A stretch of 63,911 bases of DNA, filler included, from Octopus bimaculoides (taxonomy: Eukaryota): NCBI RefSeq assembly GCF_001194135.2. It is 7 parts of 6 records of this genome, joined end to end, with 100 filler letters (N's around TTAATTAATTAA, not from the genome) between each part and the next. Parts side by side here need not be neighbours in the genome. Positions count along the whole stretch, not along the records: positions 43,716 to 54,624 come from NC_068988.1; 6 more parts are not named here. One strand, given 5' to 3'. Position numbers and translations under genes: made by a program. Below, one piece after another: positions 47,716 through 53,171 of this stretch. The notes beneath the pieces were generated by a model that saw only the letters and a list, made by a program, of their open reading frames with translations, did no database searches and was not told the origin of the DNA. Each line of letters opens with the position of its first letter. The first letter of the stretch is position 1.

Positions 47716-48570
47716 CTAACTGATATATTGTGAATTCTCGACAAGTGTTGTTCCAGTTGAGTTTAACAAAAATCTTAATTTATAAAAGTCCTCTATTGAA
47801 AAGCTTCCACTCGGATCAAGAGAGCACCGAGCAAACCGATTGACCATCATTGATCTCTCCTTGTCCAGCCAAAAGTCATAAGCTTGTTCCTGACTAGTGA
47901 AAGTGCTCCCTGCAAGCTCACTTGGGTAAGGTCCCCAAATGACAAGCTCCAGCATACCTCTGACGATAGCCAGGCAGTCTGGTTTGTCTGATTGGAGCAG
48001 CTCAAGTCCTCGATACAAACCCTTGGAACATTCTAAAAGCTTCTCATCATCAAAGAGATACTTATCAAAGAGATTATGCAAGAGTTTGGCACAGAAATCA
48101 TTCATATCTGATGGTAGTTTATTATCAGCTTTGAAAGAAGGGAGCAAACACACACGTTTTCCACTGAAGTTCTTCTGAGATAGAAGGAATATTCTAACTG
48201 GTCGGAAGTGAAGCTGCGGGGATCCCCGATCGAGATGATGCAGAATCCCACTGACGACTTGCAGGAAAAGGAAAGACAAAATCTGGACAAAGCTGTCTGG
48301 GTTGTGCAGCATGGTGTCTTTAAGGTCAGTGATGTAGTCGTGCCAGGTGACCATTGATGAGTACTGACCAACAGCTAGGTGCCAATGGGGACTCGGGATG
48401 ACTGCTGTGGATGAAGATGAAGATCCTATCGGGAAAACTGAACACTGGTCGGTGTTGTCAGTCATTGATGGAAGGAATGATGCAGGAATGTCATTGGCAG
48501 AAAGGTTTTGAAGTCTCATGAAAGCAGGGTGTGGTACGTAGGAATCACAGACATTATTGCCGTGGGTCAG
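47716..48570 (-). CDS. PEAK1/Pragmin-like pseudokinase, last coding exon (rest of pseudokinase fold plus C-terminal SHED helices)
   Basis: Acceptor ttttccaactttctacttccag|CTG at 48570 (phase 0), TAG stop at 47718-47716. C-terminus LELVIWGP...WLDKERSMMVNRFARCSLDPSGSFSIEDFYKLRFL matches, from recall, PEAK1 LQCLLWGP...WLDIKRTLLMIKFAEKSLDREGGISLEDWLCAQYL. The three exons total 1919 nt and are in frame. Confidence 0.9.
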   Translation of the reverse strand: MTHGNNVCDSYVPHPAFMRLQNLSANDIPASFLPSMTDNTDQCSVFPIGSSSSSTAVIPSPHWHLAVGQYSSMVTWHDYITDLKDTMLHNPDSFVQILSFLFLQVVSGILHHLDRGSPQLHFRPVRIFLLSQKNFSGKRVCLLPSFKADNKLPSDMNDFCAKLLHNLFDKYLFDDEKLLECSKGLYRGLELLQSDKPDCLAIVRGMLELVIWGPYPSELAGSTFTSQEQAYDFWLDKERSMMVNRFARCSLDPSGSFSIEDFYKLRFLLNSTGTTLVENSQYIS

Positions 48571-48639
48571 CTGGAAGTAGAAAGTTGGAAAATAAAAATT
48601 ATTAATTAGTCACAAACGATGTCTTTTTTTATATCAGCC

Positions 48640-49016
48640 CTGAAATTAAAGCTTCATTTTCAACAAACACATGAAAAGCACTTTGTACACTCAGGAAGGG
48701 CATTCAGCCAGAGAAACCATTCCAAGGCAAACATTGGATCTTGGTACGATCCTTTAACTAACGAGCCTCTGTTGAACTGTCCCACCCATGCTGGCATGGG
48801 AACTGAACATCAAATGATGATGATAGTGAATATGTTTAGAGATACTGAGCTTCGTATATTTGTACCCCAGTGTCACTCTGATGACATGCACTGCTCTCTC
48901 ACTCAAGAAGAAGAAGAAGAAGAAGGAGAAGAAGAAGAAGAAGAAGAAGAAGAAGGAGAAGAAGAAGAAGAAGAAGAAGAAGAAGAAGAAGAAGAAGAAG
49001 AAGAAGAAGAAGAAGA
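48640..49016 (+). mobile_element. Intronic composite: SINE 3' part with RTE-like tail, then a LINE 3' end with (GAA)n tail
   Basis: CCCATGCTGGCATGGGAACTGAACATCAAATGATGATGA, then CATGCACTGCTCTCTCACTCA + (GAA)n. The same 3' end recurs at about 54587-54605 with (AAT)n. Confidence 0.55.
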
Positions 49017-49539
49017 NNNNNNNNNNNNNNNNNNNNNNNNNNNNNNNNNNNNNNNNNNNNNNNNNNNNNNNNNNNNNNNNNNNNNNNNNNNNNNNNNNNN
49101 NNNNNNNNNNNNNNNNNNNNNNNNNNNNNNNNNNNNNNNNNNNNNNNNNNNNNNNNNNNNNNNNNNNNNNNNNNNNNNNNNNNNNNNNNNNNNNNNNNNN
49201 NNNNNNNNNNNNNNNNNNNNNNNNNNNNNNNNNNNNNNNNNNNNNNNNNNNNNNNNNNNNNNNNNNNNNNNNNNNNNNNNNNNNNNNNNNNNNNNNNNNN
49301 NNNNNNNNNNNNNNNNNNNNNNNNNNNNNNNNNNNNNNNNNNNNNNNNNNNNNNNNNNNNNNNNNNNNNNNNNNNNNNNNNNNNNNNNNNNNNNNNNNNN
49401 NNNNNNNNNNNNNNNNNNNNNNNNNNNNNNNNNNNNNNNNNNNNNNNNNNNNCAGAATGCAAAGACGGATGAGATGCTGCTGAGCATTTTGCCAGGCATG
49501 CTACCAATGCTGCCAGCTTGCCGTCTTAATGATAGTAAC

Positions 49540-49574
<35 letters not shown>

Positions 49575-49852
49575 TAATAATAATAATCCTTTCTGCTAGA
49601 GGCACAAGGTTTGAAATTAGAAAACAGGAAAAATAATCCAGAATGCTTGCCCGGTACTAGATCTTTCCCAAAATCTAATCAGTTCATGCCAGTCACGAGG
49701 CCAAACATCCCTGAAAGTTTCATCCGAATCCATCCAGCGGTTCTTGAGATATCTTGTCCATGGACAAACAAACAAACACAACTGAAAACAATACCTTGGC
49801 TTTCGCTAAGGCAGAGGTAATAACATATATATATGTGTGTCTGTGTACTTAC

Positions 49853-50370
49853 AACAAGATGGCAAGATGCTTTGTCCTGTAACAATTTTGCACCATATAC
49901 AATACAATCTTCTGATGTATGTACAGGCTGTTTACTGATTAACTCGAAGTCTGACCATTTCAAGAAACCAAGGGTTCGGTCTAAACCTCGAGAGAAGATG
50001 CTTTCAAAATAATTGTGAATGTGTTGCAGAGTATCTTGGTTCATGTTGGTCAGTTTGCTGTACATCTCCTTCACATCATCTGCACCTAGACTTATTGTCA
50101 CTGTAGCAGGCCTATTCATTGCTACATACTGTTCAGGGGGGGCACCGTGTGGTCGCTTAGGTTTACGTCTCGGAGCTGGCTTGGGTCGAGTTAAAGTGCC
50201 CATTGTTGGTTGAGGAAGAGGTGCCAACGGAGGCTGTGGTGTCTGTGTACAGTGTTCTAGCAGGTCTTCTGATGAGCGTGATTGTATTGGCGTTTTTGCT
50301 TCCCCAACAGTTGAGCGAGGGATTCTGTTATCCTTGGGCAAAGGTGGGGGTCCACCTTCATCAGCATTAT
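49853..50370 (-). CDS. PEAK1/Pragmin-like pseudokinase, penultimate exon (PPPLPK motif, SHED alphaS helix, start of N-lobe)
   Basis: Acceptor ttttgtcttttgcag|AT at 50370 (phase 1), donor GTT|gtaagt at 49853 (phase 0). VKEMYSKLTNMNQDTLQHIHNYFESIF...LKWSDFELISKQP...IVYGAK resembles, from recall, the PEAK1 segment EVYAKIRTLHTDALKKL...SWSDFRLTSDKP...VYYTAS. Confidence 0.88.
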
Positions 50371-51289: not shown

Positions 51290-51332
<43 letters not shown>

Positions 51333-51699
51333 GTATACATACACACACATATATGTACATACACACACACACACATATATATATACATATATGTGTNNNN
51401 NNNNNNNNNNNNNNNNNNNNNNNNNNNNNNNNNNNNNNNNNNNNNNNNNNNNNNNNNNNNNNNNNNNNNNNNNNNNNNNNNNNNNNNNNNNNNNNNNNNN
51501 NNNNNNNNNNNNNNNNNNNNNNNNNNNNNNNNNNNNNNNNNNNNNNNNNNNNNNNNNNNNNNNNNNNNNNNNNNNNNNNNNNNNNNNNNNNNNNNNNNNN
51601 NNNNNNNNNNNNNNNNNNNNNNNNNNNNNCGTTACTCTGAGTTTCACGTTCCCGTTCATCGGACAATTTTGTTAGAATTTCTGCTGCTTTTAAATAAAG

Positions 51700-51732
<33 letters not shown>

Positions 51733-51759
51733 ACCTCTACTGGCACTTTGTTGGTTATG

Positions 51760-52035
51760 ACAAGGGTTCCAGTTGATCTGATCAATGGAACAGCCTGCTT
51801 ATAAAATTAATGTGCAAGTGGCTGAGCACTCCACAGATACATGTGCCTTTAACATAGTTGTCAGGGAGATTCAGTGTGACACAGAATGAGACAAGGCTGG
51901 CCCTTCGAAATATAGGTACTACTCATTTTTGCCAGCTGAGTGGACTAGAACAACAAAAAATAAAGAGTCTTGCTTAAGGGCACAATGCACTTCCAGGTAT
52001 TGAACTCATGACCTTGCTATTATAAGCTGAATGGC
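51760..52035. mobile_element. CpG-decayed SINE-type repeat in intron
   Basis: TACTCATTTTTGCCAGCTGAGTGGACTAGAACAAC...AAAGAGTCTTGCTTAAGGGCACAATGCAC...ATTGAACTCATGACC is the reverse of a CORE-like head with CG to TG/CA changes. Confidence 0.65.
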
Positions 52036-52625
52036 CTAACCACTAACCCATGATCAGGGTTAGGGTATTCATTCAAATATATATGTGTCTGTTCAAATTG
52101 AACATCATCCACATTAATCTCACCATGCTCACAGGGTTTACTGATGTCAAATGGGAACAATTCTTCCTTCTTAACTAAAACCATGAAGGAAAGAGAAATG
52201 TGAGAGGTTAATACATTTTGTTACTACAAAAATGGCCCTGAAAAGACTTAACTTCCTATCCTGTTGAAACTTTCTTAGTCAAAAACCGAATCCTGCATTG
52301 ATTCTGTTACAGAACAAAAATAAATGATAGAAGAAAGGACTAGAGTTTTCCTCCCTTACATTAGGGAGTGCCTCACTTCCTTTGAAGGGATTGTAAACTA
52401 AGTTAGTATGATTCTTGTGATATCATGTGTTTCATCTCTGTGCTGTTGTGTGTCATACAGGGAATAGCAAGGGAAAGAATTGTATGGTTACATCTCCAAT
52501 GAGGTAGTATATTAACACAGAAATACGAGACACCAATCCAGTCCCTCACCTCTCTCTCTCTCTCTCTCTTTCTCCCTAGGAGACAAAACAAAACAAAAAG
52601 GTAATTCAAAAATATTATACATTAC

Positions 52626-53171
52626 TTTTGCTGTATCCATTAATCTCTTCATAAATAGGTTGTGATGCTAAGATAATCTGTCTTTCCTCTTCTTCAGGAA
52701 TCTCTGGTTGTTGAGACTCCTGGTTCTGATTCGGAGGTAATTCAGCTGATAACTGCGGGGATGATTCAGCTGAAGATTCTGTAAGTGAAGTCCTCACTGG
52801 TTCAATATGCATTGTTGGAATTTTGACAGTCGTTTCACTGGGGACTGAGCTAAAAGTTGCAGCTGCAGGTGGGGCTGTCCCTACAGCAACAACTGCAGCT
52901 GTAATGGCAGGAGCTGTAGTTACAACACTTGGGGGACGCATGCTGGTTATCGGTTCTAGGTAGCCTTCTGTAGGGAAGTTACTACTGCCATTGGATGAAG
53001 TTCGAGATGCAGAGTTGGAACGTGATGGATCCACAGGATAATAATAATTATCTCGTTGTCCGGGATATTTTGGTGTGATCGGCTCGTACAAGTTTTCTAC
53101 AGATCCTAAAGGCGAGATGTTGGGATCATCAAAGTTTTTGTCTCCACCTGATCCAGAAGAGGTTGAACCAC
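52626..53171 (-). CDS. PEAK1/Pragmin-like pseudokinase, first coding exon visible in the window (internal exon, disordered Tyr/Pro-rich region)
   Basis: Acceptor ...ttttattaag|GT at 53171 (phase 1). Open frame (G)GSTSSGSGGDKNFDDPNISPLGSVENLYEPITPKY...QPIYEEINGYSK. Donor A|gtaatg at 52626 (phase 1) matches the phase of the next exon. Overlaps ORF 52615..53091. Confidence 0.8.

What the first reader, a model, noticed from the sequence alone, without database searches (positions are those of the whole stretch)
47716..53171. Invertebrate PEAK/Pragmin-type SHED pseudokinase with an even more eroded and shortened kinase fold
Seen: three phase-compatible exons encode the alphaS-type helix, the WSDF motif, and the LxWGP...WLD..R..M...FA..SLD...S.EDF C-terminal helices. 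Established: these helices form the SHED dimerisation module of PEAK1, PRAG1 and PEAK3. Seen: the beta3 position reads SCHLVLT with no VAIK lysine, the catalytic loop reads LHFRPVRIF with no Asp, there is no DFG-like motif, and only about 85 aa separate that loop from WGP. Inference: much of the activation segment and C-lobe is lost while the dimerisation scaffold is kept. This would be a minimal cephalopod PEAK scaffold; the family is described mainly from vertebrates.
Basis: partly seen in the sequence, partly recalled or inferred. Interest (0 to 1): 0.75.

Follow-up and report, generated by a model that had tools for sequence, protein, structure and literature searches.

The report
Molluscan PEAK pseudokinase scaffold gene end
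The last three exons of a mollusc's version of the PEAK1/PRAG1/PEAK3 signalling scaffold are really there: the dimerising helices are well kept, the dead kinase core has lost every catalytic residue and is about as compact as human PEAK3, and this is the normal form in molluscs and an annelid rather than a cephalopod oddity.

Summary
Three minus-strand exons (53171-52626, 50370-49853, 48570-47716) with canonical AG/GT borders splice into an open 638-aa frame ending in TAG. Both N gaps lie in introns, next to microsatellites. An intronless transcript contig from a related species reads straight across both junctions with no extra residues.

The family assignment is right. The protein and a mollusc-only profile hit only PEAK1, PRAG1/SgK223 and PEAK3 among solved structures (profile E=1e-15). 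Two AlphaFold models (pLDDT 84-85), one built without vertebrate rows, match PEAK1/PRAG1 best (Foldseek E about 1e-13, TM 0.63-0.70). PINK1 is far behind.

The β3 Lys, the HRD Asp and the DFG motif are all absent, and so are the activation segment, αG and a real αC. The helices αD, αE, αF, αH and αI remain, so "much of the C-lobe lost" overstates it.

The compaction is not cephalopod-specific. The αE-to-WGP distance is 109 aa here, 96-123 in 31 non-vertebrate homologues, 113 in human PEAK3 and 162-172 in five vertebrate PEAK1/PRAG1-type sequences.

Single invertebrate PEAK genes were already reported in 2021. This is a new, divergent member of a known family. Interest is modest.

The parts
52626..53171 (-). 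Exon 1 of the piece. It is an internal exon entered at an AG acceptor. It encodes disordered-region residues 1-182 of the 638-aa fragment, with the conserved tyrosine motifs NLYEPI (53094-53077), EGYLEPI (52968-52948) and QPIYEEI (52662-52642).
   Evidence: Splice sites and frame come and motif coordinates. The motifs are conserved in every molluscan orthologue examined. tblastn hits of the homologues fall on this exon.
50371..52625 (-). Intron between E1 and E2. It holds the assembly gap 51397-51629, flanked by (TA)n at 51290-51392. Its length is only an estimate.
   Evidence: No homologue hit falls in it. The homologous transcript L001 is continuous across this junction.
49853..50370 (-). 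Exon 2. It encodes the proline-rich motifs PPPLPKDNRIPRST (50350-50309) and RPKPAPRRKPKRP (50188-50150), the QYVAMNRP motif (50131-50108), the N-terminal SHED helix αS/αN1 (50083-49991), WSDF (49957-49946), and β1-β3 up to SCHLV.
   Evidence: The helix is residues 16-46 of the domain in both AlphaFold models, with block-mean pLDDT 77-97.
48571..49852 (-). Intron between E2 and E3. It holds the assembly gap 49017-49452, flanked by (AAG)n at 48905-49016. Its length is only an estimate.
   Evidence: Junction continuity is shown by L001 and P0001, which read SCHLVLTHDNN.
47716..48570 (-). Exon 3, the terminal coding exon. It encodes the rest of the pseudokinase: N-lobe loop, β4-β5, αD, αE (48303-48232), degenerate catalytic loop LHFRPVRIF (48213-48187), β8 KRVCLLPSF (48159-48133), αF (48108-48058), αH (48027-47995) and αI+WGP (47976-47929). 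It also encodes the C-terminal SHED helices αJ (47895-47821), αK (47799-47764) and αL (47757-47725), and the TAG stop (47718-47716).
   Evidence: The exon is uninterrupted sequence with no gap, so the short catalytic-loop-to-WGP distance is not an assembly or splicing artefact. P0055 (82% identical, 268 aa) and L001 have the same length.

Best explanation
This is the 3' end (last three coding exons, 638 codons) of the single-copy molluscan orthologue of the vertebrate PEAK family (PEAK1, PRAG1/PEAK2, PEAK3). The encoded module is a catalytically dead protein-kinase fold clamped between one long N-terminal helix (αS/αN1) and three C-terminal helices (αJ, αK, αL), which together form the split helical dimerisation (SHED) bundle.

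The protein most likely works as the vertebrate PEAKs do. SHED-mediated dimerisation presents a long disordered N-terminal region, which carries phosphotyrosine and proline-rich docking motifs, to SH2/SH3 adaptor proteins. No phosphotransfer is involved.

Compared with PEAK1/PRAG1, the pseudokinase is 55-60 aa shorter between αE and αI. The β7-β8 insert, the activation segment with the APE motif, and αG are gone. That brings it to the size of PEAK3. Unlike any human PEAK, it lacks all three of the β3 Lys, the HRD Asp and the DFG motif.

Shown here: gene structure, homology, fold, loss of motifs, conservation of SHED residues, purifying selection. Inferred: dimerisation, scaffold function, the identity of binding partners, and that the compaction is a derived loss.
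For: Gene structure: canonical splice sites and one open frame. Both junctions and the full C-terminal length are reproduced in an intronless transcript contig of a related species (L001) and in P0055.

Homology: the single sequence hits only PEAK1 and PRAG1 in the PDB. A profile of 10 molluscan sequences, with no vertebrate rows, hits only SgK223 (1e-15), PRAG1 (1.7e-14), PEAK1 (4.7e-13) and PEAK3 (0.016).

Fold: the AlphaFold2 model has pLDDT 85.3 and pTM 0.85. A control model without vertebrate rows has pLDDT 84.3. Both give αS, an N-lobe sheet, αD, αE, a β hairpin, αF, αH, αI, αJ, αK and αL. Foldseek top hits are 6bhc, 5ve6 and 6ewx at E 1e-13 to 1e-11 and TM 0.63-0.70. The next hit is PINK1 at E 3e-5 and TM 0.52, and other kinases have TM about 0.3.

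SHED hot spots defined by mutagenesis in SgK223 (PMC5660093) map as follows: L955=L, L963=L, L966→I, F974=F, P1332=P, W1354=W, R1359=R, M1363→V, F1366=F, A1367=A, D1381=D, W1382→F, Y959→N.

Catalytic residues: the β3 Lys position is V here and M, Q, V or L in all 23 non-vertebrate sequences. The HRD-Asp position is H, and the catalytic Asn position is R.

Selection: against the related transcript, synonymous sites are saturated (pS 0.84). pN is 0.12 over the domain and 0.06 over the C-terminal helices.

Scaffold logic: EGYLEP, QPIYEEI, PxPxPR and QY[VI]xMNRP motifs are conserved just upstream of αS across molluscs. Full-length orthologues carry 1100-1500 aa ahead of the module, as PEAK1/PRAG1 do.
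Against: - Dimerisation was not modelled or measured; only a monomer could be predicted.
- The central 70 profile positions, from the catalytic loop to αI, do not align to vertebrate PEAKs by HMMER. Their secondary-structure assignment rests on AlphaFold alone.
- The strict CrkII SH3 consensus PxLPxK and the 14-3-3 motif of the vertebrate tandem site are not met: PPPLPKD has Asp where Lys is required (PMC10279719).
- Pfam has no model that recognises the protein.
- The direction of the size change (loss in lophotrochozoans or gain in PEAK1/2) was not resolved by a tree. No amphioxus, sea-urchin or placozoan sequence could be fetched.
- The upstream two-thirds of the gene lies outside the piece.
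Confidence: 0.85

Rival explanations
1. The helices are kept only to brace the pseudokinase within one chain, and the molluscan protein acts as a monomeric docking scaffold without SHED dimerisation.
For: In SgK223 several of the conserved residues (F974, W1354, R1359, F1366, W1382) are also intramolecular anchors of the helices to the pseudokinase (PMC5660093). Their conservation therefore does not by itself prove a dimer. The central interface Tyr959 is replaced by Asn. No dimer model was made.
Against: The purely intermolecular core positions are also kept as L, L, I and V in nearly all non-vertebrate sequences: L955, L963, L966 and M1363. The C-terminal helices are the most constrained part of the protein, with pN 0.06. 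Asn at a two-fold axis can still make a symmetric hydrogen bond; that point is inference.
Confidence: 0.08
2. It is a PINK1-like or other divergent active kinase, not a PEAK.
For: PINK1 is the fifth Foldseek hit (E 3e-5, TM 0.52). PINK is the accepted sister group of PEAK (PMC8699254).
Against: No PINK1 or other kinase sequence is hit by the protein or by the molluscan profile, even at E up to 10 and 1 respectively. A vertebrate PEAK1-type domain, by contrast, does hit PINK1 at 2e-12. The β3 Lys, HRD Asp, DFG motif and glycine-rich loop are all missing. The αS/αJ/αK/αL helices match PEAK.
Confidence: 0.02
3. The short, motif-less core is an artefact: a decaying pseudogene, a mis-assembly, or hidden exons in the gaps that would restore the C-lobe.
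For: Two assembly gaps lie within the finding. One homologous contig (L001) carries a frameshift.
Against: The whole region from β4 to the stop codon is one uninterrupted exon without N. The same length is seen in L001, in P0055 and in 31 non-vertebrate homologues. The frame is open and under purifying selection. The L001 frameshift sits in an A7 homopolymer of a short-read assembly that also ends in adapter sequence. No homologue-like coding sequence lies elsewhere in the piece.
Confidence: 0.03

Closest known systems
PEAK3 (C19orf35), human; cryo-EM structures 8dp5/8ds6
   Same: SHED helices flank a pseudokinase. The C-lobe is compact: αE(LQ)-to-WGP is 113 aa against 109 here. PEAK3 lacks αG and has a shortened activation loop (PMC10279700). 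WGP, WL..R, FA and LEDW-type C-terminal motifs are shared.
   Different: PEAK3 keeps the β3 lysine and an intact DFG (PMC10279700); the molluscan protein has neither. PEAK3 has a short N-terminal region of about 130 aa, whereas molluscan orthologues carry 1100-1500 aa. Sequence similarity to PEAK3 is the weakest of the three (profile E 0.016). The shared compaction is therefore probably convergent; that is inference.
PRAG1 / SgK223 / Pragmin (PEAK2); structures 5ve6, 6ewx
   Same: It is the best sequence and structure match (profile E 1e-15; Foldseek TM 0.65-0.70). The SHED hot spots are conserved. It has a long N-terminal disordered region. Its EPIYA motif (EPIYAES in the PRAG1-type sequences P0035 and P0039) resembles the molluscan QPIYEEI. 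αC is absent or unresolved in both (PMC10279700).
   Different: PRAG1 keeps the β3 Lys, HRD and an APE/αF region that still looks like a kinase. It also has a long activation loop and the αG helix that mediates higher-order oligomers (I1243, F1271, Y1282; PMC5660093). All of that region is missing here. Its αE-to-WGP distance is 162-172 aa.
PEAK1 / SgK269; structure 6bhc
   Same: The architecture is the same, and it is the best single-sequence hit (2.8e-9) and the best Foldseek E-value (1.4e-13). WSDF is identical. Protein length is comparable (1746 aa against 1549-1871 aa in molluscs).
   Different: PEAK1 has the YSNL Grb2 site, the PPPLPKK-14-3-3 tandem site and an NPxY Shc site (PMC10279719). 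None of these is present in that form here. PEAK1 retains kinase-like C-lobe sequence that still detects PINK1, ULK, GRK and Nek7.
Single invertebrate PEAK genes reported by Ounoughene et al. 2021 (Trichoplax RDD46585.1, S. purpuratus XP_030856156.1, B. belcheri XP_019622371.1)
   Same: One PEAK gene per genome outside vertebrates, with PINK as sister family (PMC8699254).
   Different: That table contains no protostome. Molluscan orthologues are annotated in databases as uncharacterised, 'mucin-19' or 'NAC alpha-like'. Those three sequences could not be fetched, so whether they are compact or long is unknown.

Membership tests
PEAK pseudokinase family (PEAK1/PRAG1/PEAK3; NKF3) | Significant and specific sequence similarity to the PEAK pseudokinase plus flanking helices | tested here: met
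   phmmer hits only PEAK1 (2.8e-9) and PRAG1 (4.8e-8). The mollusc-only profile hits only SgK223 (1e-15), PRAG1 (1.7e-14), PEAK1 (4.7e-13) and PEAK3 (0.016).
PEAK pseudokinase family (PEAK1/PRAG1/PEAK3; NKF3) | Long N-terminal helix (αS/αN1) directly before the kinase N-lobe, followed by the W-S-x-F anchor | tested here: met
   Helix at domain residues 16-46 with block-mean pLDDT 77-97 in two models. WSDF is at aa 320-323. The αS-to-WSDF spacing is 41 aa, against 43 in vertebrates.
PEAK pseudokinase family (PEAK1/PRAG1/PEAK3; NKF3) | Three C-terminal helices (αJ, αK, αL) after αI/WGP that complete the SHED bundle | tested here: met
   Helices at domain residues 319-343, 351-362 and 365-375, with block-mean pLDDT 83-98. 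The WGP-to-end distance is 72 aa, against 74-80 in vertebrates. W1354, R1359, F1366 and A1367 are identical.
PEAK pseudokinase family (PEAK1/PRAG1/PEAK3; NKF3) | Homo- or heterodimerisation through the SHED module | not testable with these tools
   Only monomer prediction was available. Conservation of the interface residues L955, L963, L966 and M1363 as L, L, I and V is indirect support.
PEAK pseudokinase family (PEAK1/PRAG1/PEAK3; NKF3) | Protein-kinase fold with degraded catalytic motifs (pseudokinase) | tested here: met
   Foldseek matches PEAK structures at TM 0.63-0.70, with generic kinases below. The β3 Lys, HRD Asp, catalytic Asn and DFG are all substituted. Nucleotide binding was not tested.
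PEAK pseudokinase family (PEAK1/PRAG1/PEAK3; NKF3) | N-terminal disordered region with the CrkII SH3 motif (PxLPxK) next to a 14-3-3 site (the tandem site) | tested here: inconclusive
   PPPLPKDNRIPRST is present in this protein and in the related transcript, but it has Asp at the Lys position and no RxxS/TxP. It is absent from gastropods and bivalves, which instead share RP[KR]PxPR[RK] (consensus from PMC10279719).
PEAK1/PRAG1 subgroup | αG / activation-loop surface used for higher-order oligomers (SgK223 I1243, F1271, Y1282) | tested here: not met
   The region is absent. Eight residues link β8 to αF, and about ten residues link αF to αH. αE-to-WGP is 109 aa against 162-172. PEAK3 also lacks αG (PMC10279700).
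PINK1 kinases | Active kinase motifs (VAIK Lys, HRD, DFG) and sequence similarity to PINK1 | tested here: not met
   No PINK1 hit appears at E up to 10 or up to 1 with the profile. The motifs are absent. Structural similarity is weaker than to PEAK, at TM 0.52.

The most novel reading that the evidence does not exclude
Lophotrochozoan PEAKs may be a naturally minimised form of the family. The SHED bundle and the helical C-lobe core stay under strong constraint, while αC, the activation segment, αG and every catalytic residue have gone. The size reached is the same as in PEAK3, apparently independently. If so, the only function conserved across Bilateria would be SHED dimerisation that presents a cluster of SH2/SH3 docking motifs (YxxP, YEEI, YxxM, PxPxPR). 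The αG-mediated oligomerisation of PEAK1/2 would then be a feature retained or elaborated in vertebrates.
Probability: 0.4. Interest if true: 0.45.

Novelty: new member of a known kind. Interest (0 to 1): 0.3.

Why it matters
PEAK pseudokinases are studied almost only in vertebrates, as cancer-linked scaffolds. A protostome orthologue has lost every catalytic residue, the activation segment and αG, yet keeps the mutagenesis-defined SHED residues under purifying selection. That is comparative evidence that dimerisation, and not any residual feature of the kinase active site, is the constrained function.

It also offers a small natural construct of about 375 aa for structural work. It flags that molluscan orthologues in public databases are unnamed, misnamed or split in two.

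It does not open a new kind of system. The family, its presence in invertebrates and a compact family member (PEAK3) are already published.

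Tried and rejected
- Pfam scan of the 638-aa protein gave no family at E up to 10. Pfam has no model sensitive to this domain.
- The first word-indexed homologue search was swamped by low-complexity words and gave 5 hits. The third, with an annelid-like alignment, returned only 2 sequences already known. The taxa of about 15 unnamed homologous fragments therefore stay unknown.
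- An exact look-up of the exon-3 ORF in public assemblies found nothing on record. The nearest named relatives are gastropods and bivalves at about 30-33% identity.
- A dimer prediction was not possible with the monomer-only tool.
- Rfam scan of the piece gave no hit.
- tblastn of all homologues against the piece found no further exons upstream (53172-54624), downstream or in the introns.
- The PINK1-like reading, the pseudogene reading and the hidden-exon reading were each considered and rejected (see rival explanations).

Full report
**Layout and the gap question**

The usable piece is window 43716-54624. It contains three N runs: 46414-46604, 49017-49452 and 51397-51629. The gene lies on the minus strand.

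Three-frame translation and junction inspection give three exons:
- E1, 53171-52626
- E2, 50370-49853
- E3, 48570-47716

Every exon is preceded by AG, and E1 and E2 are followed by GT. Spliced together they give one open frame of 638 codons, closed by TAG at 47718-47716.

Both gaps inside the finding lie in introns, and no coding frame crosses an N run. The long "ORFs" that the ORF listing shows across the gaps are X-runs and mean nothing. Each gap abuts a microsatellite, (AAG)n or (TA)n, which is the usual cause of short-read assembly breaks.

The two sides of each gap belong together in this order and orientation. The three exons are colinear with an intronless transcript contig from a related species (L001, from Logan run SRR27666085). 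That contig reads ...EEINGYNK|NDAEE... and ...SCHLV|LTHDNN... with no extra residues. After one A7-homopolymer frameshift, L001 continues to ...FYKLRFLLNSTGTTLE and then runs into sequencing adapter.

A second relative, P0055, is 82% identical and has an exon-3 product of the same length. tblastn of all 65 collected homologues against the piece hits only the three exons. Hidden exons in the gaps are therefore very unlikely. The intron lengths as written (2255 and 1282 nt) are only estimates.

**What the observation amounts to**

The distance from LHFRPVRIF to WGP is 83 aa.

The 638 aa are a C-terminal fragment of the protein. E1 begins at an acceptor in phase with the conserved GGSTSSGS exon start of bivalve models. 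The orthologues are 1549-1871 aa long.

**Family assignment**

- phmmer of the 638 aa against all PDB sequences, at E up to 10, returns only PEAK1 (6bhc, 2.8e-9) and PRAG1/SgK223 (6ewx, 4.8e-8; 5ve6, 4.8e-4).
- An exhaustive phmmer search of 1.84 billion representative proteins finds 44 relatives.
- The best eight are full-length proteins of Lottia, Haliotis, Biomphalaria, Elysia, Potamilus, Ylistrum and Nucella plus one unnamed assembly. They are about 33% identical over the whole 378-aa query.
- The annelid Owenia (4e-4) and lungfish PEAK1 (2e-4) appear near the threshold.
- A profile built from ten molluscan sequences, with no vertebrate rows, hits only the PEAK family in the PDB: 1e-15, 1.7e-14, 4.7e-13, and PEAK3 at 0.016.
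- Pfam does not recognise the domain.

**Fold**

AlphaFold2 on a 46-row alignment gives pLDDT 85.3 and pTM 0.85. A control run on 41 rows without any vertebrate sequence gives pLDDT 84.3 and pTM 0.84, with the same elements.

| Element | Residues |
|---|---|
| αS | 16-46 |
| β strands | 61-63, 75-82, 88-95 |
| Long, partly low-confidence loop where αC should be | 96-154 |
| β4 and β5 | 155-167 |
| αD | 168-181 |
| αE | 183-206 |
| β hairpin carrying the former catalytic loop | 213-223 and 231-239 |
| Linker | 8 residues |
| αF | 248-264 |
| Short helix | 268-273 |
| αH | 275-285 |
| αI | 291-304 |
| αJ | 319-343 |
| αK | 351-362 |
| αL | 365-375 |

Foldseek against the PDB puts PEAK1, SgK223 and Pragmin first (E 1e-13 to 1e-11, TM 0.63-0.70). 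PINK1 follows at 3e-5 (TM 0.52), and ordinary kinases sit at TM about 0.3.

The fold is therefore PEAK-like, including the flanking helices. What is missing is the activation segment (P+1 loop, APE), αG and a real αC. The C-lobe helical core is retained.

**How unusual the shortening is**

In the joint alignment, the distance from the LQ of αE to the W of WGP compares as follows:

| Sequence set | αE(LQ)-to-WGP |
|---|---|
| This protein | 109 aa |
| 31 non-vertebrate homologues | 96-123 aa |
| Human PEAK3 (chain 8dp5, Q287 to W400) | 113 aa |
| Five vertebrate PEAK1/PRAG1-type sequences | 162-172 aa |

The other spacings barely differ between groups: αS to WSDF is 41-46 aa, and WGP to the end is 66-90 aa.

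PEAK3 is already described as lacking αG and having an activation loop two-thirds as long as in PEAK1/2 (PMC10279700).

The compaction is real relative to PEAK1/PRAG1. It is the norm in molluscs and an annelid, and it has a precedent within the family.

Vertebrate PEAK1 still detects PINK1 (2e-12) and ULK, GRK, Nek7 and CLK2 through its APE/αF region, so those features are ancestral kinase features. I infer that the lophotrochozoan form is a derived loss, convergent with PEAK3. I could not fetch amphioxus, sea-urchin or placozoan sequences to test this.

**Motif erosion**

| Position | This protein | Other non-vertebrate sequences |
|---|---|---|
| β3 Lys | V | M, Q, V or L in all 23; never K |
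| HRD Asp | H | mostly E |
| Catalytic Asn | R | D in 23 of 30 |

The DFG-equivalent region reads LPSF here.

The molluscan consensus TExDFRDVFL has become LHFRPVRIFL in this lineage. This catalytic-loop change is the one respect in which the window's protein is more eroded than its molluscan relatives.

Neither the single sequence nor the molluscan profile detects any non-PEAK kinase. A vertebrate PEAK1-type domain does. That supports "more eroded" at the level of sequence signature.

**SHED conservation and selection**

I mapped the residues shown by mutagenesis to hold the SgK223 dimer together (PMC5660093) onto the alignment:

| SgK223 residue | This protein |
|---|---|
| L955 | L |
| L963 | L |
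| L966 | I |
| F974 | F |
| P1332 | P |
| W1354 | W |
| R1359 | R |
| M1363 | V |
| F1366 | F |
| A1367 | A |
| D1381 | D |
| W1382 | F |
| Y959 | N |

Y959 makes a Tyr-Tyr hydrogen bond on the two-fold axis in SgK223. The same position is Asn in 15 of 20 non-vertebrate sequences and His in the two PEAK1-type vertebrate sequences. An H-bonding residue is thus kept there in most sequences; the structural reading is inference.

Against the related transcript, synonymous sites are saturated (pS 0.84). pN is 0.12 over the domain and 0.06 over the C-terminal helices. The eroded domain is therefore under purifying selection and is not decaying.

**Mechanism**

Shown: a PEAK-type fold with no catalytic residues, conserved SHED residues, and a preceding disordered region.

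Also shown: short motifs conserved across all the molluscan orthologues examined lie in the 240 aa before αS:
- N[LMV]YE[PL]I
- EGYLEP[VI]
- [AS]QPIYEEI
- RP[KR]PxPR[RK]
- QY[VI]xMNRP

In Owenia, the PxPxPR motif and a YILM motif are present.

From general knowledge of SH2/SH3 specificities, which I did not test, these motifs resemble YxxP (Crk-type), YEEI (Src-family), YxxM (p85) and PxPxPR ligands. QPIYEEI also recalls the EPIYA motif of PRAG1, which reads EPIYAES in P0035 and P0039.

PPPLPKDN[RK]xPR[SA]T, seen only in this protein and the related transcript, resembles the vertebrate PPPLPxKK...RxxSxP tandem site. It does not satisfy PxLPxK (PMC10279719).

The most likely working model is a SHED dimer that presents phosphotyrosine and proline-rich docking sites to adaptor proteins. 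It would lack the αG-mediated higher-order assembly of PEAK1/2.

**Comparison with the literature, and novelty**

Ounoughene et al. 2021 (PMC8699254) state that a single PEAK gene exists [quoted passage not shown]. They root their tree with PINK. Their accession table lists Trichoplax, S. purpuratus and B. belcheri but no protostome.

I found no paper in the held library that describes molluscan or cephalopod PEAKs, or the compact invertebrate form.

Public annotations call the molluscan orthologues uncharacterised, "mucin-19" or "NAC alpha, muscle-specific form-like". Many gene models are split at the E2/E3 junction.

The finding is thus a correct identification of a divergent new member of a known family. 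It carries a modest comparative message and is not a new kind of system.

**Limits**

- The source organism could not be named.
- The dimer was not modelled.
- The polarity of the size change is inferred.
- The upstream two-thirds of the gene is outside the piece.

Noticed in passing
window 53844-54452 (-): A degenerate mariner-type transposase remnant, broken into at least two ORFs. One ORF hits Pfam Transposase_1 (PF01359) at 9e-14. It sits upstream of exon 1, so it lies inside the next intron of the PEAK gene.
   Followed up: partly
window 46605-46629, 48905-49016, 49527-49587, 51290-51392: Microsatellites (AG)n, (AAG)n, (TAA)n and (TA)n. Three of them directly abut the three N gaps, which explains why the assembly broke there.
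   Followed up: yes
window 43716-44090: A GC-rich direct repeat of about 187 nt in two copies (83% identical over 98 nt), cut off by the edge of the piece. The long overlapping ORFs on both strands here are probably by-products of the repeat. No Pfam hit.
   Followed up: partly
related proteins P0009 (Biomphalaria), P0008 (Haliotis), P0002-P0005, P0014-P0024, P0056-P0064: Public models of the molluscan orthologues are misnamed ('mucin-19', 'nascent polypeptide-associated complex subunit alpha, muscle-specific form-like'). Others are split into an N-terminal fragment ending exactly at the E2/E3 junction and a separate C-terminal fragment.
   Followed up: partly
window 50131-50108 (-), protein aa 262-269: The motif Q-Y-[VI]-x-M-N-R-P lies about 15 aa before the αS helix. 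Y, M, N and R are invariant in the ten aligned molluscan sequences. Owenia has Y-I-L-M in that region. It fits the YxxM pattern but has not been tested.
   Followed up: no
locus L001, nt about 1428-1440 and the 3' end: The related transcript contig has a one-base homopolymer (A7) frameshift that truncates its called protein (P0001) at 472 aa. The contig ends in Illumina adapter sequence. The coding sequence continues in another frame to the normal C-terminus.
   Followed up: yes
window 46392-46931 (-): A 179-aa ORF downstream of the PEAK stop codon runs into the 46414-46604 gap. It has no Pfam hit and no homologue among the collected proteins. It is probably 3' UTR or intergenic noise.
   Followed up: partly
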